From Asterias rubens (Eukaryota), in contig NC_047062.1 in NCBI RefSeq assembly GCF_902459465.1, forward strand, positions 558,001 through 622,000: a stretch of 64,000 nt of DNA, in the 5' to 3' direction. This document shows, piece after piece, positions 1 through 63,312 of the stretch (its first letter is position 1; every line of letters starts with the position of its first letter). The notes under the pieces were generated by a model. It was not told the origin of the DNA and did no database searches. It worked only from the letters and a program-made list of their open reading frames with translations. The position numbers and the translations under genes were made by a program.

Positions 1-3000
1 CAGACTATGTTTCAAGGAGCTGGAAAAGTTGTCCTTATAGCAATTGCAATGTAAGTTAATCTCAAAGATTCTTCATCATTTATTGTAAATGGTTTATTCT
101 CTATTTGAGCAATATGTGTTAATATGTGATTTATTTATTTAGTTATATATTTACTTGTCCTCTTTGAAGAAGTTGTGTTAACTCTTTCTTTACCATGGGG
201 GACTTCAACGAGACAGCTTCCATAGCTTGACTGCAACTTATTATCATTGGAGTGATAATAGAGTTTGCAACTTAAGCCTCTAAATACATCATGCAGGCTG
301 TTTTGTAATAACTTATGGATGATACAACAGTTCGGGATCCTCCAAAGAAAGAAGCACAATAAAAGCTTGGAATTACCGGTATGAAGAAGAAGATGAATAA
401 ATGTTCAGTTTGAGTTTTTGGAGGCAAACCCCAAAAGAAGGAAAACACACGTAATTGGTTGGGACTCAATCCACATAAGTTGTGTTCATTGTGGGAGTGG
501 GTCCATAGAGGAGAAGGCAAGGCTAGGAGCCAATATGATCCCTGCTTCAATCTTCTTTTGGGCATAAATCATCTATGTTCTCTTTCTCTTTCAGTAACTC
601 AGCTAATTTCCTGTTCAAGCTGGTAGCCTGGATGTACAGTGGTTCTTCCAGTATGTTTGTAAATCATCTATGTTCTCATTCTCTTTCAGTAACTCAGCTA
701 ATTTCCTGTGCAAGTTGGTAGCCTGGATGTACAGTGGTTTTTCCAGTATGTTTGTAAATCATCTATGTTCTCATTCTCTTTCAGTAACTCAGCTAATTTC
801 CTGTGCAAGTTGGTAGCCTGGCTGTACAGTGGTTCTTCCAGTATGTTTGTAAATCATCTATGTTCTCATTCTCTTTCAGTAACTCGGCTAATTTCCTGTT
901 CAAGCTGGTAGCCTGGATGTACAGTGGTTCTTCCAGTATGTTTGTAAATCATCTATGTTCTCATTCTCTTTCAGTAACTCGGCTAATTTCCTGTTCAAGC
1001 TGGTAGCCTGGATGTACAGTGGTTCTTCCAGTATGTTTGTAAATCATCTATGTTCTCATTCTCTTTCAGTAACTCGGCTAATTTCCTGTTCAAGCTGGTA
1101 GCCTGGATGTACAGTGGTTCTTCCAGTATGTTTGTAAATCATCTATGTTCTCTTTCTCTTTCAGTAACTCAGCTAATTTCCTGTGCAAGTTGGTAGCCTG
1201 GATGTACAGTGGATCTTCCAGTATGTTTGTAAATCATCTATGTTCTCATTCTCTTTCAGTAACTCGGCTAATTTCCTGTGCAAGTTGGTAGCCTGGATGT
1301 ACAGTGGTTCTTCCAGTATGTTTGTAAATCATCTATGTTCTCATTCTCTTTCAGTAACTCGGCTAATTTCCTGTTCAAGTTGGTAGCCTGGATGTACAGT
1401 GGATCTTCCAGTATGTTTGTAAATCATCTATGTTCTCATTCTCTTTCAGTAACTCGGCTAATTTCCTGTGCAAGTTGGTAGCCTGGATGTACAGTGGTTC
1501 TTCCAGTATGTTTGTAAATCATCTATGTTCTCATTCTCTTTCAGTAACTCGGCTAATTTCCTGTTCAAGCTGGTAGCCTGGATGTACAGTGGTTCTTCCA
1601 GTATGTTTGTAAATCATCTATGTTCTCATTCTCTTTCAGTAACTCAGCTAATTTCCTGTTCAAGCTGGTAGCCTGGATGTACAGTGGTTCTTCCAGTATG
1701 TTTGTAAATCATCTATGTTCTCATTCTCTTTCAGTAGCTCAGCTAATTTCCTGTTCAAGCTGGTAGCCTGGATGTACAGTGGATCTTCCAGTATGTTTGT
1801 AAATCATCTATGTTCTCATTCTCTTTCAGTAACTCGGCTAATTTCCTGTTCAAGCTGGTAGCCTGGATGTACAGTGGTTCTTCCAGTATGTTTGTAAATC
1901 ATCTATGTTCTCATTCTCTTTCAGTAACTCAGCTAATTTCCTGTGCAAGTTGGTAGCCTGGATGTACAGTGGTTGTTCCAGTATGTTTGTAAATCATCTA
2001 TGTTCTCTTTCTCTTTCAGTAACTCAGCTAATTTCCTGTGCAAGTTGGTAGCCTGGATGTACAGTGGTTCTTCCAGTATGTTTGTAAATCATCTATGTTC
2101 TCATTCTCTTTCAGTAACTCAGCTAATTTCCTGTTCAAGCTGGTAGCCTGGATGTACAGTGGTTCTTCCAGTATGTTTGTAAATCATCTATGTTCTCTTT
2201 CTCTTTCAGTAACTCAGCTAATTTCCTGTTCAAGCTGGTAGCCTGGATGTACAGTGGTTCTTCCAGTATGTTTGTAAATCATCTATGTTCTCATTCTCTT
2301 TCAGTAACTCAGCTAATTTCCTGTTCAAGCTGGTAGCCTGGATGTACAGTGGTTTTTCCAGTATGTTTGTAAATCATCTATGTTCTCATTCTCTTTCAGT
2401 AACTCAGCTAATTTCCTGTTCAAGCTGGTAGCCTGGATGTACAGTGGTTCTTCCAGTATGTTTGTAAATCATCTATGTTCTCATTCTCTTTCAGTAACTC
2501 AGCTAATTTCCTGTTCAAGCTGGTAGCCTGGATGTACAGTGGTTCTTCCAGTATGTTTGTAAATCATCTATGTTCTCATTCTCTTTCAGTAACTCAGCTA
2601 ATTTCCTGTTCAAGCTGGTAGCCTGGATGTACAGTGGTTCTTCCAGTATGTTTGTAAATCATCTATGTTCTCTTTCTCTTTCAGTAACTCAGCTAATTTC
2701 CTGTGCAAGTTGGTAGCCTGGATGTACAGTGGATCTTCCAGTATGTTTGTAAATCATCTATGTACTCTTTCTCTTTCAGTAACTCGGCTAATTTCCTGTT
2801 CAAGCTGGTAGCCTGGATGTACAGTGGTTCTTCCAGTATGTTTGTAAATCATCTATGTTCTCATTCTCTTTCAGTAACTCAGCTAATTTCCTGTTCAAGC
2901 TGGTAGCCTGGATGTACAGTGGATCTTCCAGTATGTTTGTAAATCATCTATGTTCTCATTCTCTTTCAGTAACTCAGCTAATTTCCTGTTCAAGCTGGTA

Positions 3001-6000
3001 GCCTGGATGTACAGTGGTTCTTCCAGTATGTTTGTAAATCATCTATGTTCTCTTTCTCTTTCAGTAACTCGGCTAATTTCCTGTTCAAGCTGGTAGCCTG
3101 GATGTACAGTGGATCTTCCAGTATGTTTGTAAATCATCTATGTTCTCATTCTCTTTCAGTAACTCAGCTAATTTCCTGTTCAAGCTGGTAGCCTGGATGT
3201 ACAGTGGTTCTTCCAGTATGTTTGTAAATCATCTATGTTCTCATTCTCTTTCAGTAACTCAGCTAATTTCCTGTTCAAGTTGGTAGCCTGGATGTACAGT
3301 GGTTCTTCCAGTATGTTTTCTGAAGCAATTCACTCGGCTGCCGATGTTTGTAATCAGGTCATTCTTGCCTTAGGAATCAGACAGTCCATCAAGAGACCTT
3401 CAGCGGATCATCCGTGAGTTTTCTTTATCACAATATTCAACCAACAATATTTAGGCATAATATTTGAATTACTTTAGTCTGATTTTGTTTGGGAAAACCC
3501 CCAGACAAATTATGAATGATTAAAGTTTCCTATATCATAATATTCAACATAATACTCAACAATATTTAGTCTGATTTCTACAAATTGTGATTAAACAGTA
3601 TAGCCTGGAAAGTTTAATAAAGCCTGTACCATGTGAACATGTAGGTCAGCCCCTGTACTCAATAAAATGTTACTACTTGTTTCCAAGGAAATGCCTGAAT
3701 ATGTTGTCAGTTCAAATATAGGTAACCAAAAGTAGCATGTAAGCAGCACACAAGTTTTAAAGTGCACAAATGTGACATATTTTCTAAATAATTTGGATTT
3801 GCAAATGAAACCAATGCTGAGTAAAGGGGCATATCTCAGAGCTTGCTAAGCTAGTGTATTCTTACAACTCTTAATTTGTATTTGTAACTAAGAGATGTTT
3901 TTAAAAATGCCCAGTGTAGCATCTTGCCTGCTAGAAAAGGTCCTGGAGTGTGCAAGGTTACTCATTTTCTAATGGTAGTCTATTCTGGGTTTTTACAGGT
4001 ATGGATTCAGCAGTATTCGATATGTCTCTTCACTCATCAGCGGAGTCGCCATTTTCTGTATCGGTGCTGGCTTTTCTTGTTACCATGGTTTCATGGGATT
4101 AATCCATCCCGAGCCAATGGAATCTCTCTTCTGGTCATACTGTATTCTGGCTGGATCACTTCTAACAGAGGGAGGTAGGTTTATTTCTGCCACCCAAGAG
4201 GGCCCTCAATTCCTGCTCAATGGTTCTGACACAAGCTGTGGTTCAAGCACAGGTATAAGTTCTTGTTCCTGCTATAGTTTTGGCTCTGGTGCAGGCTGTG
4301 GGTCCTCTTCTGGTTCCAGTTTTTTGTTTCAGTTTTGGCTCTATTGCTGGTTACACCTCTGGTCTAGTGCCGTTTCCAGCTCTGTGAGCCCTAACCACTT
4401 CACATGGTATTTTTAGAACATTTCCATGCATTTATAAGTTCTTGTTCTTGCTATAGTTTTGGCTCTGGTGCAGGCTCTGGGTCCTCTTCTGGTTCCAGTT
4501 TTTATTTCATTTCATTTCATTTTTATTTCATTTTATCACAGCATGCAAAAGAAAGATCTCATTTTCCTTTGTGCCGGTAACTCCTCGAGCCGGGCTACGT
4601 CCCGTAGCCTTAGATCTCAAGGGTCTTTCTCAGGATCCTCGCTGTTCCCAAAAGCGCTGCCTTCTGTAATAGATCTACCCTCACATTTGTCCCTATTTCA
4701 TCTAGATGTTTCCCCAGTGCTTTGGGAATGGTGCCAAGTGCTCCAACCACCACGGGGACTACTTTTACCTTTACCTGCCAAATTATTATTATTAGCTGTT
4801 TCGCTAGCAGCGAAACAGCTCTTGTTTTTGTTAAAGTTTTTGTTATTGTTTTTTATTTTTTTATTTTTTTTATTTGTCTGTTTCAGTACTCGCAATTTTT
4901 TGCATACATGTAGTTCCCAAAGATCAATTGCAATGAAACTTTCAGGGATTGAAGGTTATGGTGCAATAATGATCCTAAAGCAAGGATGTCATGATGACGT
5001 CATCACTGGTCACGTGACGTCATCTTAAAGGTGTTTTATGTTAAATGTTTGAAAATCTATATCAAATCAGCCAAACGAAACCGTAGGTTTCTGTTTGCGG
5101 GATGTGGTAGGGATAAATTAGGTCTTCATTTTGTTTTGTGTGCGTGACCTCACATGACCTCTACTTCTGGTTGAAACGGGCCAAAAACGGAAGTGCCCTG
5201 TAACTCAAAAGTGGTAAAAGTTATGAAGATGCTTTCCAAGGACGTAAGTGTCTAGCAAGGGTGGGCAGTTCAAAAAAAATATTGATGACGTCACAAATTG
5301 CAACAGCGCCCTCTAGCGGCAGGTTGAAAAATCGTCAAAATGGACTTTTTTGAAGATGTGTGTGGTGAAGTTTTTTGTAATCACTTTAAATTTTACACAC
5401 ATGTTTACGGTCAGCCAGCCATCATGCGTGTGAAGTTTCAGATCAATGACGTCATCGGGGGTCACGTGACGTGTCCTCAAAGGTGCACTTTTTGAATTAA
5501 TATAACTCCCTAAGTAATTATGCGATCATGTTGAAACTTGGTAGGTTGGTGGATATTGACAAGTTCTTATGAAATGCGACATGACGTCATGATGACGTCA
5601 TCACATGATTTTTTATGATTTTTTCAATTTTTGCACCTTTAACATATAAATTGCTATCTGAATATGGTATAATCCAAATTATTTTTTTATTTATGCCACA
5701 TTGGGCAAATTGCTTTGAATACCCAACAAATTTAAAACTCAGTTGAGAAATTTGAAATTTTTATTGACGAAACAGCTCTGCATTTGTGCACAAATGCAAT
5801 TTAGCTCTAGTTATTATTATTATTATTATTGTTATTATTATTATTATTATTATTATTTATTTGACCTCAACAAATACCACATTGCCACATTGGAACCCTG
5901 ACTTTTATCTTAAATGATGTGATTTTGTGTTTCAGCTACCTTAATGATTGCCATCAATGCTATTAAGAAAGGAGCTAAAGCTAAACAACAGACCTTCATG

Positions 6001-9000: not shown

Positions 9001-12000
9001 GATAGGAGTTGAAGACTTACACAACGATGGAAGAGATTGAAGGATTCATGTTGAAACATGGAGAGAAGATTATTGATTCACTTGGAGCTGAGGTAGACAG
9101 GATAGAAAAGGAAATCAAGGTAATTATAGTTCTATTATTTCTACTGCATGTATTGATGATAATTACTGAGAGTTTTTTTATTGTTGATATCTGTAGACAA
9201 CTTTTTATTCCAGGAATATTTGAAATGTTATTAGCATGGTTTCCCTTGTAGTCAATAGACGATGTGACCTATGTTTACATTTAAACCGCCCTCTGTTGAC
9301 AAAACACTGTATACGTCATGTTTCGCTGGGCAAAAAGACGCGTAGTCGTGGTAAGATTGCATACACTTTCTAGCTGGCTGCCAAAACACAAAGGTTTTGC
9401 CCGGCGGTATGCGCGCGAATCATGTTATGGTTTTCGAGTGACGTCAGAGGTCACATCGTCTATAGAAGGGGCTGCTTACCTGAAGCAAGTATACTGTTTG
9501 AAACGTCGAGACCAGACCAACTATTTTCAGAGCCAACACTACTCCCAATAGAGGACCAGATTTAGACATTTTTTCATGTCGAGTCACACAAATTGCAAAA
9601 GTTTGTTTTATTGTTGATTCTTGTTTATTGGGTGGTTATTGATGACATATCCAAAATCAGACATGAGTTTCAAGCCAGAAGTGACCTAATTTGCATATTT
9701 AAATTAGGTGGTAATTAGCAATCTTTAAAGTCAATTATCTCTAAAACTATTCATTTTATGGACAAGTTTTGTGTTAGAGGTGAATAGAAACCCGACCCTG
9801 AGAATCTAAAAAACATATTTGTATTCTCGATTGACCCTTTACAAATAACTAGGTCAAAGGTCAAGAGGTTAAACATGGTTTAATTGGTTTTCTCCACTCA
9901 AATGCATTTACATGGCATATCATGACAGTGTAATAAATACCATGAACAAATTCTTCGGGTTGAATGATTCCCCCTGTACCAATTGACTTTTATCAATGAC
10001 ATTCAATGAAATAAAACTCACTCAAATGACCTCTCTAACCAGCTAGGTCAAAGGTAAAGTTGTCAACTTCATGTATTTCAACAATTGACCTGAGCTGGAT
10101 TGTTGTCCCTTTTCTCTTGTAGCAAACCTTTAACATCCCCGCCTCCCCACTGTTGCCTCCTCTTGCCCCCCCCCACTCTTTGTTGCCTATAACGGTTGTT
10201 GCCTCCCCAGTTGTTTGGTCCTAAGTTGTTGCCTCCCCATGTTTGCCTCTCCCCCCCCCCCCCCCCCCCCCCCCCCCCGCCTCCCCAGTTGTTGTCTCCC
10301 CTGTTGTTGCCTCCCGTTGCCAACACTGTTGTTGCCTCCCCTATTTTTGTCTCATCTGATTGTCTCCGTTGTTGCCTCCCCTGTTGTTGACTCCCCTGAT
10401 GTTGCCTCCTCTGATGTTGCCTTGCCTGTTGTAGTCTCTCCTGCTGTTGCCTCCCTTGCTGTTTTCTCCCCTGATTGTCTCCCCTGTTGTTGCTTCCCGT
10501 TATGTTGCCTACCCTGTTGTTGCCTCCCCTGCTTTGGCCCCCTGGTTGTTGCCTCCCCTGTTGTTGCCTCCCCTAGTTTTGCTTCCTCTGATTGTCTCTC
10601 ATGATGTTGCCCCTCCCACGCCCCCCCCTTGTTGTTGCATCACCTGATGTTGCCTCCCCATGTGTCCTCCTCCATGTTGCCTCCCCAGGTAGTACCTCCT
10701 CAGGTATTGCTTCCCCTGCTGGTTCATCCTTCTCTGGTGCCTCCCGTTGTTACCTCCCAACCTGTGCCTCCCTAGTTGTTGCCCCCTGTTGTTGCCAGCC
10801 TGTTGTTGCCTCCCTGTTGTTGCCTCTCTGTTGTTGACTCCCAATGTTGCCTCCTCAGCTGGTACCTTCTCAGGTGCCCCCCCCCCCTGGATCCTCCCAA
10901 CTTGTGCCTCCCTCGTTGTTGCCTCTTCCGATTGTCTCCCCTGAAGTTGCCTCCCGTTGCCTACCATGTTGTTGCCTCCCCTATTTTTGCCTCCCCTGAT
11001 GTCTCCCCTGTTGTTGCCTCCCGTTGGCTACACCCTGTTGGTGCCTCCCCTATTTTTTCCTCCTCTGCTTTGGCCCCTTGTTGTTGCCTCCCCTGATGTT
11101 GCCTCCCAACGTGTCCTCCCCCATGTTGCCTCCCCAGCTGGTACCTCGTCAGGTATGGCTTCCCCCGCTGGTTCATCCTCCTCTAGTGCCTCTCGTTGTT
11201 ACCTTCCCAGGTGGTACCTTCTCAAGTGTCCCCCCCCCCCCCCCCCCGCTGGTTCCTCCCAAACTTGTGTCTCCCTTGCTGCTGACTCTATCGTTTAGAG
11301 CACTGTTAACTATAGTTGTTCTGCGGTCGTCTTCTTCACAAGAATTGTATCATGTAGAGCACCATCCGCTATACGCCTTCCCACTGAGCATAATAGGTGA
11401 CCGTATTTTTACCAGCATAGGTCCTCTCTGCCGTCAATGGTTATTTTGCTATACTTTGGAAACTACCTTGGAGGTTATTAGAGGCTCACGCCCCGGTGTT
11501 TGCTTGACGTCCTTATGTAGTTTAGCTTTATCATAGAACAGACAAAGCCTTTTCTCCTACAACCTGAGTTTCATGACATACCAAACATAAAATCGAGTAC
11601 TTTGGCAAATTTTCTGATACACTCATGCGGATACTAAACCGCAATGAAATTAGCTATGCTGTTTAGGGCACATCGCAACTAAGTGGTCTTTATACATTTG
11701 CTGACACATTGACCTTTGACCTAGATGATGACTATTATAGGTCATTTGGGACAGGGTGGAATCATTCAACCTGAAGAATTAATTAATTATTTGTTACACT
11801 GTTATGGTACCACGTACAATGCATTTGAGTGGAGAAAACCAATTAAACGCATGTTTAACCCCTTACAAATATGTTTTTTAGATTCTCAAGGTCAGGTTTC
11901 TATTCACTTCTAACACAAACCTTGTCCATAAAATGAATAGTTTTAGAGATAATTGACCTTAAAGATTGCTAATTACCACCTAATTTAAATATGCAAATTA

Positions 12001-26014: not shown

Positions 26015-26648
26015 CAGACGGAATGACACACTTAGGTTTTACATTCATTATTTGTTTGCTCTCCGAGTGTCTGTATTAAGCCCTTGCATTGTCCGCCATC
26101 GATGATTAAACTTGCATGAGGCTACCAGTGGCTGAGAGGCATGCACTTTTCCATTGTTTATTATCAAAGGTGGTGGTCAATGATGTCATGTGCAACCCTT
26201 CTATTAAACCAGATCTTTCTCCAGTTGAAAAGTCAACCATTCTTGACCCATCTGATGAAACTATGGCTGCTGTTTTTAACTGAGGCTATTCATTTAAACC
26301 CTATGGACTATTTAGAGGTTTGGTAAAGGTTCATTTTATTAATTGGAGGTTTGATGTCGTCTAACTCTTTGATGAGTTTTAGACATTTGAGAAACAGAAT
26401 AAGCTTATGGAAGCTGTAGAGGTCGTGCTTGCAGCTTACTCGTCTGGCTTTGAACTATGTCACCTCTTTAGTTTGTACAGTTGAAGATGCTAGACCTTGT
26501 TCCAATTTGATGGCTCTGCTTAACGTGTAGTTTGGGGGATATCATCTAGTTATCACCATTCTGTGCTTACTGGGTTAGTGCAAAGTTTCTGTGTTATATG
26601 AAGTATGCACCAGCACAAGAAAAACATATACTTTTTTGGGGTTGATTA

Positions 26649-27290: not shown

Positions 27291-27334
27291 GATTTACTTA
27301 TGTACATTACGGAACCCATTGCTAAAATACAAGA

Positions 27335-27600
27335 TTCGAACTGCCTCTAGCTACCAGGCAATCTCGGTAGTCTAGTTGGTAAGACACTGCTCTAGAATTG
27401 CAAGGGCCGTGGGTTCGAACTGCCTCTAGCTACCAGGCAATCTTGATAGTCTAGTTGGTAAGACACTGCTCTAGAATTGCAAGGGCCGTGGGTTTGAATC
27501 CCATCCCAGTAATATGCCTGTATTTTCCTTTTCACAGAGCTCTGAAAAGTAGTGAGTAAACATGCCTAACACACATTGGTGTATGTTGGTAAAACCATAA
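27335..27600 (+). mobile_element. Second tRNA-derived SINE family, head duplicated; degenerate relative at ~63720-63850
   Basis: GGTAGTCTAGTTGGTAAGACACTGCTCTAGAATTGCAAGGGCCGTGGGTTCGAA occurs twice. The tail CACACATTGGTGTA is shared with 63817-63830. Confidence 0.7.
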
Positions 27601-50470: not shown

Positions 50471-52485
50471 CTTGCTTTGTACTTAATTCACTTGCGGTAA
50501 ACCTTGTAACCTTTGCACGTTTATCAGTTGAGTTAGTTCATTATTTACTGCCCGCACATTGTTTTGAAATGGCGCCACCATGTGGTCATTTATGGCCAAC
50601 CTTATTTACAACCACTACCATTACATTGTAGTACAGAGCGCTACCGTGATAACACATTTTTAAAGCCTTTTTAGACTAAAGACGCATGAATAAAGGCCCT
50701 AAACTTCCTGCTGTGACGATTCAAACACAGCTCAACAGAAGTAATCGGGGAAAATTATGTTTTGGAGACGGCACTGCCTAACATTTAGCAACATTTGATG
50801 TGATGAAATGGGGGACAGTCACATCTCAAAACTTGTTCAGCTGGTATTTTAAATAACTATTGGATTTATGTGAAAAGTACGACATCGACACAAAATGTAG
50901 AATTTCCCATAAAATATGACCAGTCTACATAGTATCCTGCCTAGTAGAAAAGCAAAAAAATGTACAAAGTCACACTTATTGTAAACAGAAGTGACAAGAG
51001 TTTGAAATAATAAACGCCAAGAATTGAGGTGCAACTTTGGTACATTACATTTCCCCCAGTGCAAAATTATCAACATGGTACATTAATTTGTCGTCTCCAA
51101 CTAAATTTTGTTTGTAAATTAAACTTAATTACTAATGTCAATTTACACTAGTTATGTACAGTCTGCCTCTTCTTTTACCCTTCTACATTTTTACAAAAAT
51201 GATTCCAGGGACAAGCTACAACAAAACAGTTGTTGAGTCCATTTAAAGTTTATAAAAGGAAATAGTTTATTCAACACCACTACACTAAATACTAACAATG
51301 AAATATACAGTAACACAAACTAAGACTGCTATAGCTACACCCCTCAAAAAACACAGACAATTCTACCAAGAAAACTAAGAAAGTCAAAATGTCACTTTGC
51401 ACACATAGTTAAAGCTGTGTCGTGAATTTTAAAGTCCTTATCTCATATCATTTTCAAAACAGGACACAATGTTTGCAGCAATTAAGTTAAATTTTTTTTA
51501 CTAGAAAAAACTGTTTGTCATTCCAATTATTACCCATGTCTGGGCAAAATGCAATTGAACAGAATCAAATGATCTCCAAAGCTTTACCGATATCCAAAAT
51601 GACTTACACACTAACTTTGCTTGCATTATCTGATACTGTAGAAGTATTTGCAAAATGAATGTCTAAGTTTAATTTAAAAAGTTGTCAAAGATTGAAAGTG
51701 CAAGTTTTTTTAATCAAGCAGAACTATTAGATTTACAGCACGCACCTGATTCTGTGGGTTGTACTAAAAGACTTGTTCAGTAAACTAAGATTTTAAAAAA
51801 GGGACAATAAAAATCCAGCATGATTCTGGTCAATAACCAGCTTATAGTTCTCCAAAACGATACAGAGACTGACTACGGATAACAAATAAATTGTTTTTAA
51901 ATACTGCAGAAAAGTAACATTTAGTTGGCTACCACTGGTTCTACAGAAATAAGACATAGGTTGAAGTGTAAAAAATTATGTACAAAAGTTATCTTACATT
52001 ACCACAACAAAGACTTCTTAAATCAATGGTTGAGCATCACATCAACTTGGGATACAAAGACTTTGTCAACGTATTGGCAAACCTTAAGAAAAACAAAATT
52101 ATCAATAGTCTAGGGGTCTAGGGTCATGACAAATTGAGAAATTTAGCTTTTGAATACAACTCCCTTAGGTGATTTACAAGGTTCGTTATTCATTTTAATA
52201 AATGCCAAGCTGAAATAGGTACTAAACAAAATAACCTGCTAAATACAAATAATCCAGGAAGCAGTAATGAATATGATCCATTCAAGGTCTTGAACAGGTA
52301 ACTCAATCCCGCTAAGCAAAATATTTCTGAATGCAATCAGTTTGTATACATGCTTACTGGCATTTTGTGAAACCAATGTTCAATACCAGAGTGAAATGGC
52401 CACCAGTTGTTAACATGGACACATATTGCGGTAAAAACGTCAAACAGGAAGAATTTTGTAGACAGGTAAGGACTGCGATCAACGT

Positions 52486-55400
52486 CTATCTGCTTGCCTG
52501 CTCCTTCAGCTGCTTGTAAATCTGTTCCTTAAAAAAGTCTTTGTTGTGCGGACGATACGATGTGGTCTTCCTATCAAATCTGCAATTACAAGAGAAGAAA
52601 CACAATCAATCTTAAGAAAATGAAAACCCTTGAAACATAAAGACTGAAGATGATAGAAAAGGGAACAGGATGGAAACGGGAGAAGGCTGAAGTGAAAGGT
52701 TGATTCAAATAAAATAAGCTGTGCTCTTTCAAATATAAAACAATATAAATTTGATGTTTGTGTTTTCTTTCCTTTTCCAAGGGTGACTGTTTTGTTTAAT
52801 GATAATGTTTAAAGTAAACAAAATAAAAATGCATTGTGAATACACTTACTTCAACAATGCCAAGTAACTGCAAACATGGCACAATTAAACACCTTTTCAT
52901 TAAATTATTGCATAAAATCACAACAAATAAACATAAACCAAAGTTGCTTTTGTCTAGAAGCAGCCTCTTTTTTGGGATTTCAAAGAAGTATTAAATTCGA
53001 ACTCATTAATATCTTAACTTGAGGCCTTGTATTCACCAGGAATAAAAACTATATCAACCATCAAGTACGATACCAAAATAAAAGTGCACCAACCAAAGCA
53101 AATAGTGGCGCATTGGATAATTAATAAACAAGTACAAACAAAAACATGCAAAACACATTTTGCACAAAAGTCTCGCATAAAACTAAAGCAAATTTGCCGA
53201 GGACAAAGGGAATGTGCAAACATGATGACTGATAACAAAACAAACACAAAAGCTGTTAGATATGGTTGATGGAAAAAACAAATTACAGCAAATAAAACAG
53301 ACTGTGGCCACTAACAAAATGATTTTGAAATGAAAGCCCACAAAAGCTAAAGACTTGTGATTCATATTCATGCATCAAGTGATATTCGAGATGAAAAATA
53401 ATGGGCGTAATGTTTTGATTTGCCATGCCACACACAGTGCATTATTGAGCAGTTCCCCTTAAGTTGATTCTAACCCTCACCCGTTTCATGATCATTTGAG
53501 GGCCTGCCTCCGCAATAGAACATAGATCTTCTCTTTGACCCAGTCTTTGTTGCAAGGAAGATACGTCATTGTCTTCTTATCCAACCTGCCGGAATGGGAA
53601 CAGCCAAATAGAGAAGTCACTAAAGTGAACACTTATTCCTCGTGGTTCAATACAAGCCACAGTCACATACATGTACATGTATCAACCACAAAATCAAAGA
53701 TTTGGGTCTTCATTTTATGAAAGATGTTATGAAAACGATGCTTTCCCACAAAACAGAAACAAATTAAAATAGATAAATTTATATCGATATGCATGGGGGG
53801 AAAACGAATGCTAAAAAAATAAAAAATAAATAAAAGGCCCTGTAACATAACGATGCTTCATGCTATGCTTGAATTCAATAAAAAAAACTTGAAGTTTTTG
53901 GTTTGTAGAAAACATTAGTTCGTCTGTGAGTAAATTTGGTGTAATAGTCTGTGGAACTTGATGGGTTAATGTGCATAGGATAAATGACTTGAGAGTAACA
54001 GCCAGGAGTTAGTAAAATGCATGAAATGGAGTCTGATATGCGGTTATTTTTCAGCAGAATGGCTCTTTATAGTTTTTTTATGTAAGGTGTCAATATTTGG
54101 TGCGATGTCAATTTAAAAAAATTGCTCATCTACAATGAAAGTTTTTATAGTAAATACTAAAATTTTGCATATCAAAAAATATGTATATATGTATATAAAA
54201 AAAATAAGTAAATGGAAGCTGATTCTGATTGGCTCTGGTAAATATAATTTATGGAAATATTCAGAAATAATATAAATATTCTCAGGCCTGTATGCTTCGT
54301 TTTTGAAAGGGCAAGGGCACCAAGGCATTTTCTCTTTAAGAAAGGGCACCCTATGAGGAAATTGTAAATTTCTACTTGAGCATTTCAAGGGCACCAAGGC
54401 AATGGCAAGGGGCAATGGAGGCAATCGCCTTCGTTGCCTCCGTGAAGTATCAGGCCTGTACAGGGCTGTATGCTTCGTTTTTGAAAGGGCAAGGGCACCA
54501 AGGCATTTTCTTCTTGGTAAAGGGCACCCTATGATGAAATTGCAAATTTGTACTGGAGCATTTCAAGGGCACCAAGGCAATGACCAGGGGACACGGAGGC
54601 AATCGCCTTCGTTGCCTCCGTGAAGTATCAGGCCTGCATAATTCTTTTAACAGAAGATAACAGGTCATCATTATGATCATATCAATGACAAATGAGGTTC
54701 GCAAAGATAATGTTACAACAATGTTATTATGGATAGCTAATATTATGAATGAGTTTGTGAATAAGTTAATTATGTAACAACTGTTAAGAAAGACTCTAGT
54801 GTGTGCATCTGGTTTTACAGAAGGAATTTTTTTAAATGATTGCATGTATTTTGACGGGTCGCTTCAGGAACATTAAAGATTATCCACAACCAAGTTAACA
54901 GCCCAACATACCAGCAGTAATAGAAAACAAAAGAATCAATTGATGAATTAAAGCTTTGCTGGGAGAGGGGGGGGGGGGGAGGATGTGAAACAGAGGATGG
55001 TGGGAACGAGTGTTCAATCCGTTATGTGAAGAATAACTTGTAAATATATTAATGACAAGTTAACAGAATAATAGAGGACTTTAAGTCTTGAATCAAAGTA
55101 AATCTTAGCTACAAGTAGACTGCAGATCCACATGTACATGTACATGTACATGTATCTCAAAATGTTGTCAAGACCATAGCTAGGGGCCTATTGTTTTCTT
55201 ATTTCCTAATTGCTATACTTGTAGTAGGAGGTTCATACACAGTATTAAAACTGTAAAAGCAGGTGAGAGATGGGTAGGTCTGAGGTCAGAGGTCGGAGGT
55301 GGGGCTATACTCACACTAGAGAGGTGTGTATTTCAAGTCATCAATGAATGAATTGGAATAGACAAGACGATCAATGCCACAGGTGAAAGAGGGTGGATGG

Positions 55401-56992
55401 TGGGAGGTTGGGCCAGGGGGAGGGGGCGGGGTTGGCTATACATACTTACACTAGAAAGCTAAAATCTTTCAGGTCATCAATAAATTGAGACAGATGACCC
55501 ATGTCACATGTGGTGGAGGGTGTGAGGGTGGGGCCCAGGGGAGAGGGGGACCGTAATTACACCACACAGCTAAGATCTTTCAAGTCATCAATGAATTAGA
55601 CCATAATATTGAAGGGTGCATGGGTGGGAGGTGGGGCCTGGAAGGTTGTGGGGGGGATATACTTACACAAGACAGCTGAGATCCTTCAAATCATCGATGA
55701 ATTGAAACAGATGACCAATGTCATAGGTGATTGAGGGACTGTTGGGGTTACATCTCTTCAGATGCTCTTCATAAATCTTGCAAACTCCTGAAACAAAATT
55801 TGATAAATTAAGAGTTTGTTTTTAAAACTTTCATTAAAGGATTTAATTGTTGTATGCTTTACCTCAAACAGGACAAAGCAACGATAGTTATTGGTCAAGA
55901 AATTTTCATCAAACAGGTTAACCAAAAGGTGAGGCTGATGCCCTAGAGTAGATTGTTTTGCAAAAGTAATGAAGTCAGATTTTTTTTTTGCGATAACCGT
56001 AACCCTTCATCCTCCTGACTGTCGCAGGATTGAGGTTACGATTAACGGAACTACTTATTCAGCTTCTCAGTCCTCACCTTCCATGCAATCTTTCACCGAG
56101 TCATAGTCAGAGTAGGTTCTTGTTTCTGCTGGGCCTGGCTGGATAAGGAGAATAGTGTGTGCCTGAAGTGATAAACAAAGAAAGATTCAATGAATTAATA
56201 TAAAAGGTAGAACGGTAAAAAAAAACACCAAAATACAACTTTAAGAAAAAAATTGTTTTTCACAACTCGTCCATACCCCAACTTCTATGTTCACACTTTC
56301 ATTTCTTCCATGCTCCAACGAGCACTGTGTCATTGTAAGCTAAATCAGTCATATACATGGACCGTGCCAACCATTCTGAGTCAACTCAAAGATTTTTGTA
56401 CTCGGCAAAGCGATGTATACTTAATTTTATAAGAGCTGAGGCAGCTGAGCTGAGCTGCCTGAACCCGAGGATGAGGTACGGAATAAGCCATGATAAGCCA
56501 TTTTCTAATACTCCTAGAACTATGATGAGGAACGTTCGGCTAACGTCTCCCGTTAGGCGTTAATGCCTTGTAATGGAGACTATAGCCTAACGAACCTCAG
56601 TCATTAATTATAGTTATGAATATGTTGTGATGGATATTTTTCCGCATGGCGCCACCACTTTTTACCTCATATTTACAAAAAGGGATATCTCATTGAGGTA
56701 AATTAGATACTATATTATTTCATATCGAATTAAAAAGTGGTGGCGCCATATGGAAACTTTTCCGTACGTTATTTTTTACGAACTTAATACTAATTTTATT
56801 ATCCGTTAATTCTTACAATGTTGCAATGAAAATCAATCGGTTTCTAAATGAGTTTTTGCCAATGCAGAAAACAAATGAGAAAGCTTTCATTCACGGTCAG
56901 TTTCATTCACTATTCAGTTCAGTTTTTAATTGTTGTTTTTGCAAACGAGAATTGAGACAGAGAGCATTAAAATAAATCATCTTAATTACCAT
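52486..56992 (-). CDS. ERH: Enhancer of rudimentary homologue, 100 aa, divergent
   Basis: Minus exons 56992-56990 (ATG only), 56162-56078, 55787-55667, 52579-52486 give [100 protein letters not shown]. Confidence 0.96.
54282..54637. mobile_element. Tandemly duplicated ~180-bp CAGGCCTG-ended element (hAT-like MITE)
   Basis: TCAGGCCTG..TATGCTTCGTTTTTGAAAGGGCAAGGGCACC...GCCTCCGTGAAGTATCAGGCCTG occurs twice. Confidence 0.65.
55300..55790 (-). repeat. Old diverged tandem duplications of ERH exon 3 end plus donor (3 decoys)
   Basis: Minus copies read [17 protein letters not shown]|gtaagt (55449), [12 protein letters not shown]|gtaatt (55560) and a more decayed FIDDLK..V|gtgagt (55314). The native reads [17 protein letters not shown]|gtaagt (55666). 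Confidence 0.85.
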
Positions 56993-57379
56993 CTTGACTT
57001 GCCCCAACAGATGAAATCAATTCAGCCTTAGTTCTTTATTAAGAGCCTCTTCCAAACCACAAAAACTGCTTCCAAAATTTTCACTTCGAGGGTTCTAGGT
57101 AGCTAGATGAGGCGAAGCATGCGATCGAGCGAGTAGTAGTACTAGATAGAGAGAGTTTGGGACGTGGAAAATGGTTTATTGAACAACGCCACCAACGTTG
57201 GGCTTCTTGTAAGTGTATTGATAGTTGACGGCTGTTTCATCATTACTGAAAAAGGAAAAACAAAAACACTAAACTGACTACAAATTTTCCTTTTACAAAA
57301 AAAACAGCTTAATCAATTTAAAACCGATTTCATACATAGATTCAAACTGTTTGTTCCCTATTTGATAACAAATTTGAAA

Positions 57380-57671
57380 GGAGGAACCTGTATCCGTTAA
57401 TGAAACTTTTCGTAATAGTATTATTAAGATTACTGGATTATAGTCTCGCACCTAGAACTACACCACATATTCCATATTCCAGGTTTCACACTGCTGGGTT
57501 ATCAGACTATTTTGCAAAAACACTGAAAACTGATTGAGTACACGTTGACAGCGCACGGACCCACACGTACATTGGTAAATGTTGGAGCGCAGTGCCAGTA
57601 GTACGTTTTTCTCCCGTCAAATCAGCTTGGTTACTAATTATTTTTCACGAATTTGATTCCAATATTTGAAG
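57380..57671. promoter_or_regulatory. Probable bidirectional promoter region between ERH and SLC39A9
   Basis: Start codons diverge 680 bp apart (56992 and 57672), with a locally CpG-richer stretch at 57540-57620. Exact TSSs cannot be determined. Confidence 0.6.
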
Positions 57672-60600
57672 ATGGAGGATGCGTGGGGAATACTGGCCCT
57701 TTCTTTGGCCATGTTAGTTGGGTGTTTTGTTGCAGGAACAATACCACTCACGGTCCCCCTTTCAGAGGCAAGTAACATTTATAACATATCTTTTTGTATT
57801 GCTCTTGCTCAAAGTCAAGTTGCTCAATTTTGATAAAATATAATACAACTGTATTTGGACTTTTTTGTTTGATGAAGGCCTTTTTAAAAAATCTGTATTT
57901 ATATTACTCTTTGGGGAACCTGTCCGTATCCTGCCACCACTTTTTCACTCATTTCTACAAAAAGAAATATGTTGTTTGATTTTTTCGAGTAAATTTATAT
58001 TTTTATAGATTAGTTAGGCTACTTATTTTAATATATATTTTGATACAAGGCCCTAACTATTTTATTTCTGTCTTTTGACATGGATTTTAAATTGTTTTAT
58101 TATGTCCTTTTCCCGTCGTAACTTCTTGCCCTGTGTTATATAACGCCCAAATTTCCTCCCCCCACGCAGGTTTTTGTGTGTAACATTGTTGTGTTTTCAC
58201 TAAAAATCTGGGTTTTTTTTCAGTGCACATTTCCTTTTTTGTACAAATGCTGTTTTCCTTCCCCAGCCCAGCCCAGTTTATTTCTGACTTAATTAGCTTG
58301 CATTTCTATTGTTTTTCTCTACAGGATTGTTTCTGTTTGGTTTCCTTTTTTGACCATGTTTAACCAAAGTAGTTTTGATATTGAATCCTCCTCTCGAAGG
58401 CCGAGCTGAGGGTTGCATTATCGCCAAATAACCAAAGTTGAGTTCGCTTGTTTCAGGAACTTACAAAACTTTAAGAGAAAGCACTTTTTGGTATCATCTA
58501 GACACGTTCCGGGGACTGCGAGGGTCAAAGACCCGAGCTACAAATAACTTTATTCAAAAAAGCTGCCGGGTTGATCGATTGGGAGTGACAACCATTTCGC
58601 CCATAAGTCAACCCTTTTACAAATCAAACACACACAAAAAGGATCCAGGCTATAATGTAGCTCCTCCTCCTGCATCCACAAAGTGTATCTCGTGTACCTA
58701 TAGAGGACCAGGTTTAAAATTTTGAGTCAAAAAATTGCAAAAGTTTGTTTTATTGTAGATTCTTGTTAAGTGGGTAGTTATTGATGACATATCCAAAATG
58801 GGACAAGAGTTTCAACCCAGAAATGACCGAATTTGCATATTTAAATTAGGTCGTAATTATCAAACTTTAAGGTCAATTATCTCTAAAACTATCAATTTTT
58901 AGGAAAAATGTAGTTTTAGAGGTGAATAGAAACATGACCTTGGGAATCTAAAAAACATTTGTATACTCAAATGACCCTTTCCCAAACAACTAGGTCAAAG
59001 GTCAAGGGGTCAAACATACGTAAAGTTGGTTTTCTCCACTCAAATTCATCATTACATGGCTTCCCATTACATTGAAATTAATAATAAATGAATTATTTGG
59101 GATGAATGATTCCACCCTGTCCCAAATGACCTCTATTGATAACATTCAATAAAATCAAAGAAATTAACAATCAAATTCATCCGACGGAATCGTGGTGCAA
59201 ATGCCTTCTTCTAGTCATTTCCCAAGCGAATAGGTGCAAATTGAACCCATTTATTTTACACAAACATCATGGTATCAATAATCCTCTGGGGCTGGATGGT
59301 TGTACATTTTCTCTGGTAGCAAGCAAAGTTTCACACTGCCCCCCCCCCCCCTCCCGATCATTAGGTTGCATTTCTACATTGCTGTTCCAAACTTGGGCCT
59401 TCAAGTATACCCTGTATGCGTGTTACTTTGAAGCATCATCTGTTGAGTGTGGTCATTGGATTGAGACACTCTTGTGACTCTTTGCCGCCATGTTGAGTGA
59501 CAAATCAAGGTTTATTCTGACATTGGCTGAAAGATTGACTGCAAAAAGGTTTGCACATTATTTTGGTTTCACGTTGCTGATGTGTTGATAATCTGTCGGT
59601 ATGTTTGTCCCTGTGTCCATGGCAAACGTTGAAGACCAGACATTTTGACACACTATTTGATGCGATGCCTGATGACGTCTTAGAGACAGTGATTCTTTTC
59701 AAATGGATTATGGCTTTCTAGGTACTCAAGAATGATTGCTGTCTTTGCCATATTTGATTTAGCTTGTTGCGTTGTTGTAGCTACTCAGCTTCTCCTGCCC
59801 TCCCCTTTTGTTGCCCCCAGTTGATGCCACCCCAGTTGCTGCCTCCCCTGTTGCGCTGCCTCCCCGGTTGTTGCGTCCCTAGTTGTCAACTCCACTTTTG
59901 TTGCCTACCGTTTTGCTGCCTTCCATTTGCTGCCACCCCCATTGCTTCCATCGTTGTTGCCTCCCCAGTTGTTGCTTCTTAAGTTGTTGCCTCCTCGGTT
60001 GTTGCATCCGATGTTGTTGCCTCCCCAGTTGTTGCCTCCCTTGTTGTTGCCTCCACAGTTGTTGCCTCCACAGTTGTTGCCGCCCTAGTTGTTGCCTCCA
60101 CTTTTGTTGCCTCCCCTTTTGCTGCATCCCAGTTGTTGCCTACCCAGTTGCCTCTTCCCTTGTTGCCTCCCGGATCCCCTGTTGTTGCCTCCCCAGTTGT
60201 TGCTTCCCCTGCTGTTGCATTTCTGGGTTGAAACTCTTGTCCCATTTTGGATATGTCATCAATAACCACCCAATAAACAAGAATCAACAATAAAACAAAC
60301 TTTTGCAATTTGTTTGACTCAACATGAATTTTTTTTTCTAAATCTGGTCCTCTACTAGGGGGGTGTCATAATTATAATTTCTAGCAATATTCATATTTTT
60401 GATTTGTTTACATGTAACCTACCAACAACCAAGGAAGACTTCTTCTTTTTCTTTGGTTTTTGTGCCAAAGGACATTTAAAATACTACAACTATTTATGTT
60501 CAAGGCAGTTAAATTATCTTTTTCAGTAAAATTACAAATTGCATATATTCATTTTATACAAATTACATTTGCTTTAAATATTGAACTGTTTGAAACATTT

Positions 60601-63312
60601 AATTTGTTTGAAGGGAATTTGATTAAACCCAGGCTCTTTCTGTACTATTTGTTCTAACAGAGCAAGTTAAGATTTGTGACAGTTCTTGGAGCTGGTCTTC
60701 TTGTTGGAACTGCACTGGCTGTTATTATTCCAGAGGGTGTCCATGCTTTATTTGAAGGAACAGAAGGTAAACCTTGGAATACCAAGTAGCATAGACTTAA
60801 AGTACACTTTAGATGGACAGTAAGAATGCTGAGTTGTGTCAATATCTGAATTAGTTGACTGGGAGGGATGGTTTGAGCCAAAAAGGTACGAGACACACAC
60901 ACACACAGTCATTTTAAGAGACAATTAACAATTAATTGTGGTTGTCCAGTGTATTGTCACTGTCAGTTCGATAAAGTCTTTAATATTAACTAATTAGTTT
61001 TATCTTTAGAAGTCCAAATGTCCCCGACAAGTTTTGTTAAGAAAGACAAATAGTTTTGTAGAGGTGTTTTTTAACCAGTGGAATTTGTGAGCATTACGTT
61101 CCTATTATTATTATTATTATTTTATTTGCCATAACAGTACAAAACAAAATACATTGACAATATACCCCGAGATGGGCAAGGGACGACAAAAGCAAATACA
61201 TACTATGATCTGTAGATCTGTTGCCCCACACCTGGGAGGGTACACAATAAAATTAATATAGATTTAACGTACACAAAGCAATAATAAAAGCAGATAATTA
61301 TACAACCAATAGTAAATAATAAATATCTAATAAGAAAATATTAATTAAAAATCTAATAAGAATAAAAAATTAATTAAAAATAAATAAGTATAAGTAACAG
61401 ATAAGGTAAGGATAAAAAATAAAAGGAAATAAATAATAAAAAGTAAACTTGTAGATCAATTAAAACAGCTTAAAATATTGCACAAGTGATTGGGCTAAAG
61501 CTACTATTCAGTAGATTCATGAGATTGGCAGACAAAAAATGTAAGTGATTTGAGAAAGCTATGATCTACATGTACTCTAATATTCAACCCTTATCAAATC
61601 TATAATACATAGCTGAATAGCTATTTTAATACCATTGTTTGGTATTTAATATTAGAAAACACTTTTGTTTCTAATTTGATATTGCATTGATTTTGTTCAC
61701 CCTCAGACTCCCATGTTCACCGAGGTGTGAATCTCCCAGCAGTAGCTCCAGATGGTCAAGCACTTGTTGCACAACCAGCAGAAGGAAACCCCCCAGAAGC
61801 AAATGGTGACGCCCATCATCATAGTCATGGCAAGAGCAATGAGGAAGAGCTCCATTATGTAATAGGGGTGTCCTTAGTACTGGGGTTTGTTTTTATGCTG
61901 CTTGTGGATCAGATTGGAGGCTCCCATGCTCATTCACATTCACAGATGTCAGGTGAGTTTGCTCAGAAATAAACCATTAGAAATATGTTGCAAAGAATCA
62001 GTTTTTACAGTTGCCAAGTAAATTGACAATTTCTTCTGTATACAGTCTATAAACCCTTGCATATGACGGCAAAAGTCCAAAACAGCGCCCTCGTTGACTT
62101 CTGGTAAAACCTATGATTGGCTGAGAGTTGCGTGCAGCGCTTACACATTGTGCATGGGTGCCATTATCTTACCTCACCGATGGCGATCAATGCAAGGGGT
62201 TCAATTATATTATCAATGTTCTGGTGTTTATTTTTTGTTGTTGTGTTGAGTGCATACAAGTAACATACACTATTATGTATGCATTTACTCTTTAGGAGAA
62301 GGTGAAAATCAAGGGAGAACGAGTCGAGTTGGTTTCACAGCAACGTTAGGATTGGTTGTACATGCAGCAGGTATCGTAGTATTATCTTTTTGGTTATAAA
62401 ACTCTGTAAAATGCCTCGGAACCCCTTGGCATGAAGAGACCTGTGAAGAAAATTTAATAAATAAATGTAGATTTTCACTGTTCATGATACTAATCTTTTT
62501 TGGGACATGCCATATATTTTGTGGGTGAATTTATTGAAACGTTTGAGCCAATTTCTGTTAAAAATAACACATTTCTTACCATTTTTACTTTCAAACTTTC
62601 TATCAAAAGAAACTTGTGAATCAGAATTCATCACATTCTGCTAAGCGAAACGTAACTGTGCTAGGCTAATTTCAAGTTCTATGCAGCTCTGTGAAATTAA
62701 CACCTGTGTAAAGTTGTGGGTTTTAATGTTTTGTTGTTGTTTATTTCTTGCCAGCGGATGGAATTGCTATGGGAGCTGCAGCAATGGGTCGTACAGATGT
62801 TCAAATGATTGTATTTGTTGCCGTTATGCTGTTGTTTATTTCTTGCCAGCGGATGGAATTGCTATGGGAGCTGCAGCAATGGGTCGTACAGATGTTCAAA
62901 TGATTGTATTTGTTGCCATTATGCTGTTGTTTATTTCTTGCCAGCGGATGGAATTGCTATGGGAGCTGCAGCAATGGGTCGTACAGATGTTCAAATGATT
63001 GTATTTATTGCCATTATGCTGTTGTTTATTTCTTGCCAGCGGATGGAATTGCTATGGGAACTGCAGCAATGGGTTGTACAGATGTTTAAATGATTGTATT
63101 TATTGCCATTATGCTGTTGTTTATTTCTTGCCAGCGGATGGAATTGCTATGGGAGCTGCAGCAATGGGTCGTACAGATGTTCAAATGATTGTATTTATTG
63201 CCATTATGCTGTTGTTTATTTCTTGCCAGCGGATGGAATTGCTATGGGAGCTGCAGCAATGGGTCGTACAGATGTTCAAATGATTGTATTTGTTGCCATT
63301 ATGCTTCACAAG
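57672..63312 (+). CDS. SLC39A9: Zinc transporter ZIP9, 5' part; continues beyond the window
   Basis: Exons 57672-57767 (GC donor), 60661-60766, 61707-61952, 62296-62370, 63230-63312. They read [102 protein letters not shown]. Confidence 0.97.
58701..60354. mobile_element. Non-autonomous long-TIR DNA transposon (Academ-like), copy 2
   Basis: TAGAGGACCAG...CTGGTCCTCTA, 3-bp TSD CTA (58698-58700, 60355-60357). Same TIR family and GTTGTTGCCTCCCC interior as 9549-12129. Confidence 0.8.
61098..61560 (-). mobile_element. Probable LINE 3' tail ending in (TAA)n
   Basis: A-rich tract and (TTA)n at 61103-61120, plus a short decayed coding-like stretch. Assignment is loose. Confidence 0.4.
62736..63305 (+). 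repeat. 95-bp tandem x6 of SLC39A9 acceptor plus first 76 nt of exon
   Basis: GTTGTTTATTTCTTGCCAG|CGGATGGAATTGCTATGG... at 62755+95n up to 63230. Only the last copy continues CTTCACAAG|GTAAG. Confidence 0.97.

What the first reader, a model, noticed from the sequence alone, without database searches (positions are those of the whole stretch)
566..63312. Recurrent splice-site minisatellites: five of seven genes have tandemly amplified exon edges acting as decoy splice sites
Seen: SLC30A9 (95 bp x29) and SLC39A9 (95 bp x6) repeat acceptor plus exon start. TRMT6 (53 bp x7), CHURC1 (62 bp x11) and ERH (3 old decoys) repeat exon end plus donor. Each array grows into the intron and never copies a whole exon. 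The functional copy is always exon-proximal: last acceptor, first donor. Extending the exon to a decoy gives a quick stop: ...TCA AGC TGG TAG; ...TTC AAA TGA; GTA AGT TAA; ...GCC TCA TGA; GTG TAA. Young identical arrays and an old decayed one coexist, so the process recurs. Inference: either strong exon-definition splicing tolerates these arrays, or array length tunes unproductive splicing and NMD, acting as a heritable dosage control on housekeeping and zinc genes. I know of no named system like this, but could not check the literature.
Basis: partly seen in the sequence, partly recalled or inferred. Interest (0 to 1): 0.92.

Follow-up and report, generated by a model that had tools for sequence, protein, structure and literature searches.

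The report
Minisatellites copying splice sites, sea star
Five housekeeping genes in this sea-star region carry tandem repeats that copy an exon edge and its splice signal into the intron. This is real, but the same kind of repeat is already known as amphioxus "mirages" and in several human genes, and their number here fits chance in a very repeat-rich genome.

Summary
Four young arrays copy an exon edge plus its splice signal: a cation-efflux/ZnT9-like gene (95 bp x29), TRMT6 (53 bp x7), CHURC1 (62 bp x11) and a ZIP9-like gene (95 bp x6). ERH has three decayed copies. Only the exon-side copy keeps the reading frame, and every decoy leads to an early stop.

The window holds 28 minisatellite arrays covering 19.4% of its bases. 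With about 67 splice junctions in about 31 kb of genic DNA, random array birth predicts 2.0-3.5 edge arrays against 4-5 seen (P 0.04-0.47).

The "exon-proximal copy is functional" rule follows from geometry plus purifying selection. It does not indicate a device.

The kind is already described. Amphioxus has "mirages", and human F7, IFI6, CBS, LMNB2 and PDGFA carry minisatellites whose first unit spans an exon-intron boundary.

The host is an echinoderm, most likely a sea star. I found no report of this kind of array for that group.

Short-read contigs support the arrays in one organism label. A close relative has only one TRMT6 unit.

Decoy use could not be tested, and the NMD dosage-control idea has no support.

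First-stage readers of this scan noted the same kind of array at many other places in this genome. Those notes are unchecked.

The parts
1..50 (+). End of the upstream exon of the cation-efflux (ZnT9/SLC30A9-like) gene. The donor GT is at 51-52.
   Evidence: The frame joins ...IAI to NSANFLFKLVAW only through the last acceptor.
565..3318 (+). 95-bp x29 minisatellite. Each unit is the last 31 nt of the intron (polypyrimidine tract plus CAG) followed by the first 64 nt of the exon. It gives 28 decoy acceptors plus the functional last one (AG at 3253-3254).
   Evidence: There are 10 variable positions, none in the AG, and a mosaic variant pattern typical of unequal exchange.
3255..3413 (+). Authentic exon of the cation-efflux gene (159 nt), followed by the donor GTGAGT.
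   Evidence: Pfam Cation_efflux E 8e-13 on 3256-3411. Sequence.
42480..42582 (+). TRMT6 exon whose last 34 nt begin the array. The authentic donor GTAAGT is at 42583.
   Evidence: PDB 5ccb_B (human TRM6) residues 372-405 align and end at the donor. Sequence.
42549..42919 (+). 53-bp x7 minisatellite, 100% identical. Each unit is 34 nt of exon end plus 19 nt of intron start. It gives 6 decoy donors.
   Evidence: Short-read contig depth is about 5x single copy in X1, and only one unit is present in X12.
48715..48785 (-). CHURC1 exon 3 (71 nt). The authentic donor GTAAGC is at 48714.
   Evidence: Pfam Churchill E 4e-7. Sequence. RNA-contig depth is exon-only.
48055..48740 (-). 62-bp x11 minisatellite. 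Each unit is 25 nt of exon end plus 37 nt of intron start. It gives 10 decoy donors. The variants TATCAG, TACCAG and CACCAG just before the donor tell copies apart.
46373..46465 (-). CHURC1 last coding exon, the acceptor partner of the array-bearing donor.
   Evidence: peptide EYSMVCILCG.... RNA contig pieces end at 46464-46468.
55667..55787 (-). ERH exon 3. The authentic donor GTAAGT is at 55666.
   Evidence: Pfam ER E 2e-17. Sequence.
55285..55666 (-). Three decayed tandem copies (period about 107-127 nt) of the ERH exon-3 end plus donor, lying in the intron.
   Evidence: Alignment A1, 67% mean column identity, GT retained in all three. Self-BLAST hits at 66-81% identity.
62735..63305 (+). 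95-bp x6 minisatellite. Each unit is the last 20 nt of the intron plus the first 75 nt of the exon. It gives 5 decoy acceptors plus the functional last one (AG at 63228-63229).
63230..63312 (+). Authentic exon of the ZIP-family (ZIP9/SLC39A9-like) zinc transporter (83 nt), followed by the donor GTAAGT.
   Evidence: Pfam Zip is weak (E 0.056). Atlas hits are Zip clusters. The ZIP9 assignment rests on motifs I recall and on ERH/CHURC1 synteny.

Best explanation
These are ordinary local minisatellites that happened to arise across exon-intron junctions. The genome makes minisatellites at a very high rate.

Geometry and selection. A tandem duplication that straddles a junction leaves one copy flush with the rest of the exon and puts every extra copy inside the intron. 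The normal mRNA can still be made from the first donor or the last acceptor. Such arrays therefore survive, while arrays inside coding exons or covering whole exons are removed by selection. Unequal exchange then expands and homogenises the arrays.

Splice-site choice (inferred, not shown here). The spliceosome picks the exon-side copy because only that copy sits in a complete exon context. For donors this matches the 5'-to-3' "most upstream site" choice shown for human F7. For acceptors, only the last copy is followed by the rest of the exon and a real donor. The decoys are thus largely silent passengers, at most with a small leak into the nearest decoy.

This is the architecture called "mirage" in amphioxus.
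For: Shown here.
- Arrays and their junction content.
- Only the exon-side copy keeps the frame, and decoys give early stops.
- The window has 28 arrays, 19.4% of bases, 0.44 per kb. The orthologous loci have 5.3% (Patiria) and 0.8% (Acanthaster).
- Random placement of the 19 genic arrays over about 30.6 kb of collapsed genic span with about 67 junctions predicts 2.0-3.5 edge arrays. I saw 4-5 (P 0.04-0.47).
- Variant patterns are a mosaic, as expected from unequal exchange.
- Array ages range from 100% to about 67% identity.
- The TRMT6 array is multi-copy in organism A short-read contigs. The contig starts k-1 nt inside the array end, and depth is about 5x single copy. Organism D has a single unit.
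- RNA contigs cover CHURC1 exon 3 at exon-only depth and have zero depth on the array.

From the literature.
- Human F7, LMNB2 and PDGFA use only the authentic donor. IFI6 and CBS also use the two nearest decoys (PMC1557585).
- Amphioxus mirages at both donors and acceptors do not disturb splicing and vary in copy number (PMC3087553; PMC3902484).
Against: - Splicing at these loci was not observed in an animal known to carry the arrays. One RNA run came from organism D, whose DNA contigs lack the TRMT6 array. The other came from organism B, whose array status is unknown.
- The point estimate is about a 1.5-2.5-fold excess of edge arrays. A real preference for junctions is therefore not excluded.
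- My exon map is homology-based and approximate.
- For acceptor arrays, a co-transcriptional "first come, first served" rule would favour the first decoy. Silent decoys there need strong exon definition, which I have assumed and not shown.
Confidence: 0.75

Rival explanations
1. Tunable unproductive splicing. Decoys capture a share of splicing events that grows with copy number. The mis-spliced mRNAs carry early stops and are degraded by NMD, so array length acts as a selected, heritable dosage control.
For: - Every decoy leads to a premature stop.
- Decoy signals are identical to the authentic ones.
- Human IFI6 and CBS do use the two nearest decoys (PMC1557585).
- Copy number differs between close relatives.
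Against: - No decoy-spliced RNA was seen (though that test was weak).
- In F7 minigenes, changing the repeat number from 1 to 12 did not change site choice.
- The young arrays are absent or nearly so in a close relative, so they are not conserved regulators.
- Early stops are expected by chance when a unit length is not a multiple of 3 (95, 53 and 62 all leave remainder 2).
- The number of edge arrays fits random placement.
Confidence: 0.06
2. Mutational hotspot. Exon-intron junctions are preferred birthplaces of minisatellites in this genome, for example through transcription- or splicing-coupled DNA damage. Edge arrays would then be truly enriched without having a function.
For: - Observed 4-5 against 2.0-3.5 expected.
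- First-stage notes of many similar cases elsewhere in this genome (unchecked).
- Amphioxus authors also suspected a general phenomenon.
Against: - The excess is not significant in this window.
- Array density is the same between genes (about 0.5 per kb) as within them (about 0.4 per kb).
- First-stage notes are selected for being striking and carry no denominators.
Confidence: 0.12
3. Assembly artefact. The arrays are stutter or collapse/expansion errors of a long-read assembler.
For: The TRMT6 array is 100% identical, and contig-level data cannot confirm exact copy numbers.
Against: - Three arrays carry copy-specific variants in a mosaic pattern.
- Short-read contigs of organism A break k-1 nt inside the TRMT6 array end and show about 5-fold depth there. 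They also cover the CHURC1 array.
- The ERH copies are diverged and cannot be stutter.
Confidence: 0.03

Closest known systems
Amphioxus "mirage" minisatellites (Adh3, globins BflGb6/BflGb9, TnC, PGBD5). Sources: Canestro et al. 2002 as cited in PMC3087553, and PMC3902484.
   Same: - Tandem repeats whose unit spans an exon-intron boundary, at donors and at acceptors.
- Units of tens to about 160 bp, with many copies keeping AG or GT.
- The authentic copy is flush with the exon.
- Copy number is polymorphic.
- Found in housekeeping genes of a marine invertebrate with a minisatellite-rich genome.
   Different: - Here the host is an echinoderm, most likely a sea star, not a cephalochordate.
- Copy numbers reach 29 here, and more according to unchecked scan notes.
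- Normal splicing was shown by RT-PCR in amphioxus but not here.
Human minisatellites whose first monomer spans an exon-intron boundary: F7 IVS7 (37 bp x5-9), IFI6/6-16 (25 pseudo-donors), CBS IVS13, LMNB2 (100 bp x10-15), PDGFA (81 bp x16-18). Source: PMC1557585.
   Same: - The exact donor sequence is repeated in the intron.
- The most upstream (exon-side) donor is used.
- The arrays are polymorphic in length.
   Different: - The human cases listed are donor arrays. Two of the five here are acceptor arrays.
- Human cases are rare single loci. Here there are five in 64 kb.
Intron gain or alternative introns from tandem duplication (Rogers 1989; Zhuo et al. 2007; Gao and Lynch 2009). These are cited in PMC3087553. 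I recall their content and could not read them here.
   Same: A tandem duplication containing splice signals creates extra usable splice sites inside a gene.
   Different: Those models concern duplicated sites that become new introns or exons. Here the copies appear to stay inside the existing intron.
Regulated unproductive splicing with NMD (poison exons of SR-protein genes). This is my own knowledge.
   Same: Use of an alternative site gives a premature stop and would lower productive mRNA.
   Different: Poison exons are deeply conserved and feedback-regulated. These arrays are young, variable between close relatives, and not shown to be spliced.

Membership tests
Mirage-type minisatellite (unit spans an exon-intron junction) | Head-to-tail tandem array of a unit of roughly 10-200 bp | tested here: met
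   TRF. Unit tables.
Mirage-type minisatellite (unit spans an exon-intron junction) | The unit contains an authentic exon edge together with its AG or GT splice signal | tested here: met
   Exons verified by Pfam and PDB. The ZIP exon is verified only weakly.
Mirage-type minisatellite (unit spans an exon-intron junction) | Extra copies lie in the intron, and the copy flush with the exon is the only one giving the conserved reading frame | tested here: met
Mirage-type minisatellite (unit spans an exon-intron junction) | Normal mRNA is made, with decoys silent or only the nearest ones used | tested here: inconclusive
   RNA contigs show exon-only depth and none on the CHURC1 array. However, one run is from organism D, which lacks the TRMT6 array, and the other is from an organism of unknown genotype.
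Mirage-type minisatellite (unit spans an exon-intron junction) | Copy-number instability or polymorphism | tested here: met
   The TRMT6 array is multi-copy in X1 (organism A) and a single unit in X12 (organism D). CHURC1 array coverage is near zero in X12. One search shows mosaic variants. This is contig-level evidence only.
Regulated unproductive splicing (AS-NMD dosage control) | The PTC-generating splice event is seen in RNA and rises when NMD is blocked | not testable with these tools
   The only read-laying run showed no such RNA. No NMD-inhibition data are available.
Regulated unproductive splicing (AS-NMD dosage control) | The regulatory element is conserved among related species | tested here: not met
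   The TRMT6 array is absent, and the CHURC1 array has almost no coverage, in organism D DNA contigs. Young arrays are 95-100% identical between copies.

The most novel reading that the evidence does not exclude
In this sea-star lineage, junction-spanning minisatellites could be truly enriched at splice sites genome-wide. Their copy number could measurably change the share of productive mRNA through leak into the nearest decoys followed by NMD. That would give common, heritable, fast-mutating expression variation in housekeeping genes. It would also provide a natural mutagenesis series for testing how identical splice sites are chosen, especially the little-studied acceptor case.
Probability: 0.1. 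Interest if true: 0.7.

Novelty: new member of a known kind. Interest (0 to 1): 0.35.

Why it matters
Practical point: gene predictors and RNA aligners will mis-place splice sites at such arrays, so annotation of this genome needs care.

Biological point: this genome offers many natural constructs with 5 to 28 identical decoy donors or acceptors next to an authentic site. The acceptor arrays have little experimental precedent. They could be used to test exon-definition and scanning models of splice-site choice, and to ask whether minisatellite length contributes to variation in expression.

As a new regulatory system the finding would matter much more, but nothing here supports that reading.

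Tried and rejected
- My first guess for the host was amphioxus, because of the "mirage" literature and the synteny with human chromosome 14. I then guessed a coral from the run pattern. Both were rejected. The only named relatives of the 820-aa ORF are sea-star proteins, and gene order matches Patiria and Acanthaster.
- The single RNA/DNA read-laying run (30) was swamped by interspersed repeats at 43.4-43.8, 45.6-46.0, 46.4-46.8 and 47.2-48.0 kb. Splice joints of TRMT6 and CHURC1 were not among the rows shown, so only depth and contig-piece boundaries could be used.
- The plan to use the CHURC1 variants TATCAG, TACCAG and CACCAG to tell which donor is used could not be carried out.
- The orthologous TRMT6 array exon in Patiria and Acanthaster lies beyond the 10-kb flank, so I made no cross-species check of that junction.
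- Canestro 2002, Zhuo 2007 and Gao and Lynch 2009 are not held.
- No PDB relative was found for the ZIP exon.
- The scan notes contain neither "amphioxus" nor "mirage".
- A self-BLAST for further decayed exon-edge copies found only the ERH ones, plus one dispersed copy of the ERH exon-4 start.
- Unit boundaries show no clear microhomology. I read this by eye only.
- The shared 95-bp period of the two zinc-transporter arrays looks coincidental, because the units are local sequence of each gene.
Full report
**What is there**

- 565-3318: 95 bp x29.0, 97% matches
- 42549-42919: 53 bp x7.0, 100%
- 48055-48740: 62 bp x11.0, 95%
- 62735-63305: 95 bp x6.0, 98%

Reading the sequence shows that each unit is a piece of intron plus a piece of exon joined at a real splice signal:
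- Cation-efflux gene: 31 nt of intron end (pyrimidine tract, CAG) plus 64 nt of exon start.
- TRMT6: 34 nt of exon end plus GTAAGT and 13 more intron nt.
- CHURC1 (minus strand): 25 nt of exon end plus 37 nt of intron start.
- ZIP gene: 20 nt of intron end plus 75 of the 83 exon nt.

ERH (minus strand) has three decayed copies of the exon-3 end plus donor in the following intron. Their period is about 107-127 nt and mean column identity is 67%. All three keep a GT, as GTAATT, GTAAGT and GTGAGT.

**Are the exons real**

Pfam scores the array-bearing exons as Cation_efflux (E 8e-13), Churchill (4e-7) and ER (2e-17). The Zip match is weak (0.02-0.06), and Gcd10p is weak on a neighbouring TRMT6 exon.

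The TRMT6 array exon aligns to human TRM6 residues 372-405 (PDB 5ccb_B). The alignment stops exactly at the donor.

The names SLC30A9 and SLC39A9 rest on motifs I recall and on synteny. The tools support only the family level.

**Frame logic**

Only the last acceptor or the first donor continues the conserved protein.

All decoys keep AG or GT.

These two "rules" are not evidence of design. A tandem duplication that straddles a junction always leaves one copy flush with the rest of the exon and places the others in the intron. Alleles where that copy cannot be used, or where a whole exon or an exon interior is amplified, would be removed by selection. Early stops are also expected, because the unit lengths 95, 53 and 62 are not multiples of three.

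The window contains 28 distinct minisatellite arrays with period of 10 or more. They cover 19.4% of its bases, at 0.44 arrays per kb, and are as dense between genes as within them.

I mapped exons by homology. Seven genes hold about 67 splice junctions in about 30.6 kb of genic span, once each array is collapsed to one unit.

I then placed the 19 genic arrays at random, each with its own unit length. This predicts 2.0-3.5 arrays spanning a junction. The range covers 60-90 junctions, with or without excluding exon-internal placements.

I observed 4 young arrays plus 1 fossil. The P value for 4 or more, or 5 or more, ranges from 0.04 to 0.47.

So "five of seven genes" is roughly what a very minisatellite-rich, intron-dense region gives by chance. 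At most there is a two-fold excess. There is also no visible depletion, which argues that edge arrays cost little.

**Host**

The 820-aa single-exon ORF at 31676-34135 (minus strand) has only two named relatives. They are uncharacterised proteins of the sea stars Patiria miniata and Acanthaster planci, at 54-55% identity.

In both species that gene sits head-to-head with a Gcd10p/TRMT6 gene, and in Acanthaster next to an M14 peptidase. The window has the same arrangement.

An identical protein occurs on a marine metagenome contig.

The host is therefore an echinoderm, most likely a sea star.

The orthologous 22-kb loci carry far fewer minisatellites: 5.3% of bases in Patiria and 0.8% in Acanthaster. 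The high load is thus lineage-specific.

**Public reads**

Interspersed repeats flooded the joint tables, so only depth and contig-piece boundaries were usable.

- **Organism A DNA (X1).** The unique contig leaving the TRMT6 array begins at 42890. That is k-1 nt inside the array end, as expected at a true repeat boundary. Depth over the array part is about 5 times single copy. The CHURC1 array is also covered.
- **Organism D DNA (X12).** The contig aligns from exactly 42867, which is one unit, and nothing lies on the preceding copy. The bin depth (7.1) is fully explained by that one contig. This animal therefore has a single TRMT6 unit. The CHURC1 array bins have depth 0.25-2, against 10-14 for single-copy sequence.
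- **RNA runs (X15 from organism B, X25 from organism D).** Depth on the CHURC1 array is zero, or 0.28 in one bin of X25. Depth on exon 3 matches exon-only coverage.

Organism D lacks the TRMT6 array and has almost no coverage of the CHURC1 array. The array status of organism B is unknown. This therefore says nothing firm about decoy use.

Taken together, the arrays are not assembly artefacts, they are young, and they differ between close relatives.

**Array dynamics**

Variant positions in the 29-copy array form a mosaic of a few haplotypes. This is the signature of unequal exchange or gene conversion.

Identities run from 100% (TRMT6) through 95-98% to about 67% (ERH).

**What is known**

[quoted passage not shown] They occur at both acceptors and donors, in Adh3, globins, TnC and PGBD5. 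They vary in copy number and do not disturb normal splicing (PMC3087553; PMC3902484).
- **Human F7, LMNB2 and PDGFA.** These carry minisatellites whose first monomer spans the exon-intron boundary, and only the authentic donor is used.
- **Human IFI6 (25 pseudo-donors) and CBS.** The two nearest decoys are also used.
- **F7 minigenes.** The most upstream donor is chosen by a 5'-to-3' scanning-type process. Changing the repeat number from 1 to 12 did not alter the choice (PMC1557585).

My literature searches found no report of this kind of array in echinoderms.

**Verdict**

These are real, correctly described arrays of a known kind in a new lineage and at unusual local density.

The most likely reading (about 0.75) is near-neutral passengers of a hyperactive minisatellite process, tolerated because the exon-side site is chosen.

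The dosage-control idea is unsupported (about 0.06). A true junction hotspot remains possible (about 0.12). An assembly artefact is unlikely (about 0.03).

First-stage notes list many similar arrays elsewhere in this genome, including MRPS18A, ACSS2, RPP40, ATRX and U1-70K. They are unchecked and were selected for being striking. They suggest the pattern is genome-wide but do not show enrichment.

Noticed in passing
window 44154-44757: A 104-bp x5.8 minisatellite starts 37 nt after the TRMT6 stop codon (44117). An RNA contig of TRMT6 runs 82 nt into it (X25 record 24), so it probably lies in the 3' UTR.
   Followed up: partly
window 41372-41441: An in-frame 30-bp x2.3 tandem duplication inside the large TRMT6 exon. 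It encodes a repeated GQDQVTVD(S/G) peptide in the poorly conserved linker. This is an example of an exon-internal array that survives because it is in frame.
   Followed up: no
window 52517-52583 vs 53523-53589: A 72%-identical copy of the ERH exon-4 acceptor plus exon start lies about 1 kb downstream of the gene end. This is a decayed, non-adjacent partial duplication.
   Followed up: partly
window 26633-27498: A tRNA-Asn(GTT) gene (26973-27045) and two tRNA-like fragments sit inside a 312-bp x2.1 tandem duplication and a neighbouring 79-bp repeat. They may be tRNA-derived repeat elements.
   Followed up: partly
window 10195-11137 and 59799-60218: The same 15-bp minisatellite (GCCTCCCCAGTTGTT) occurs twice, each time next to a shared ORF-like segment (...[17 protein letters not shown]...). 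That segment is also seen at 9566-9715 and 58759-58899. A dispersed element appears to carry its own internal minisatellite.
   Followed up: no
window 43400-43800, 45600-46000, 46400-46800, 47200-48000: Very high-copy interspersed repeats. Contig word depth there is 10^5 to 10^7 in all four runs. An organism D contig lacks 46493-47849, which suggests insertion polymorphism in the CHURC1 intron.
   Followed up: no
window 31676-34135 (-), L001, L002: A fast-evolving, serine-rich, single-exon gene of about 784 aa with no Pfam domain. In the search it had named relatives only in sea stars. It is conserved head-to-head with TRMT6 in Patiria and Acanthaster.
   Followed up: partly
window 46300-64000: CHURC1, ERH and the ZIP9-like gene are neighbours here, as I recall they are on human 14q23-24. 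This looks like ancient conserved microsynteny.
   Followed up: no
window 48839-49046: A 14-bp x15 minisatellite ends only about 54 nt upstream of the CHURC1 exon-3 acceptor. It sits in the region where the branch point would be expected, yet the exon is present in RNA contigs.
   Followed up: no
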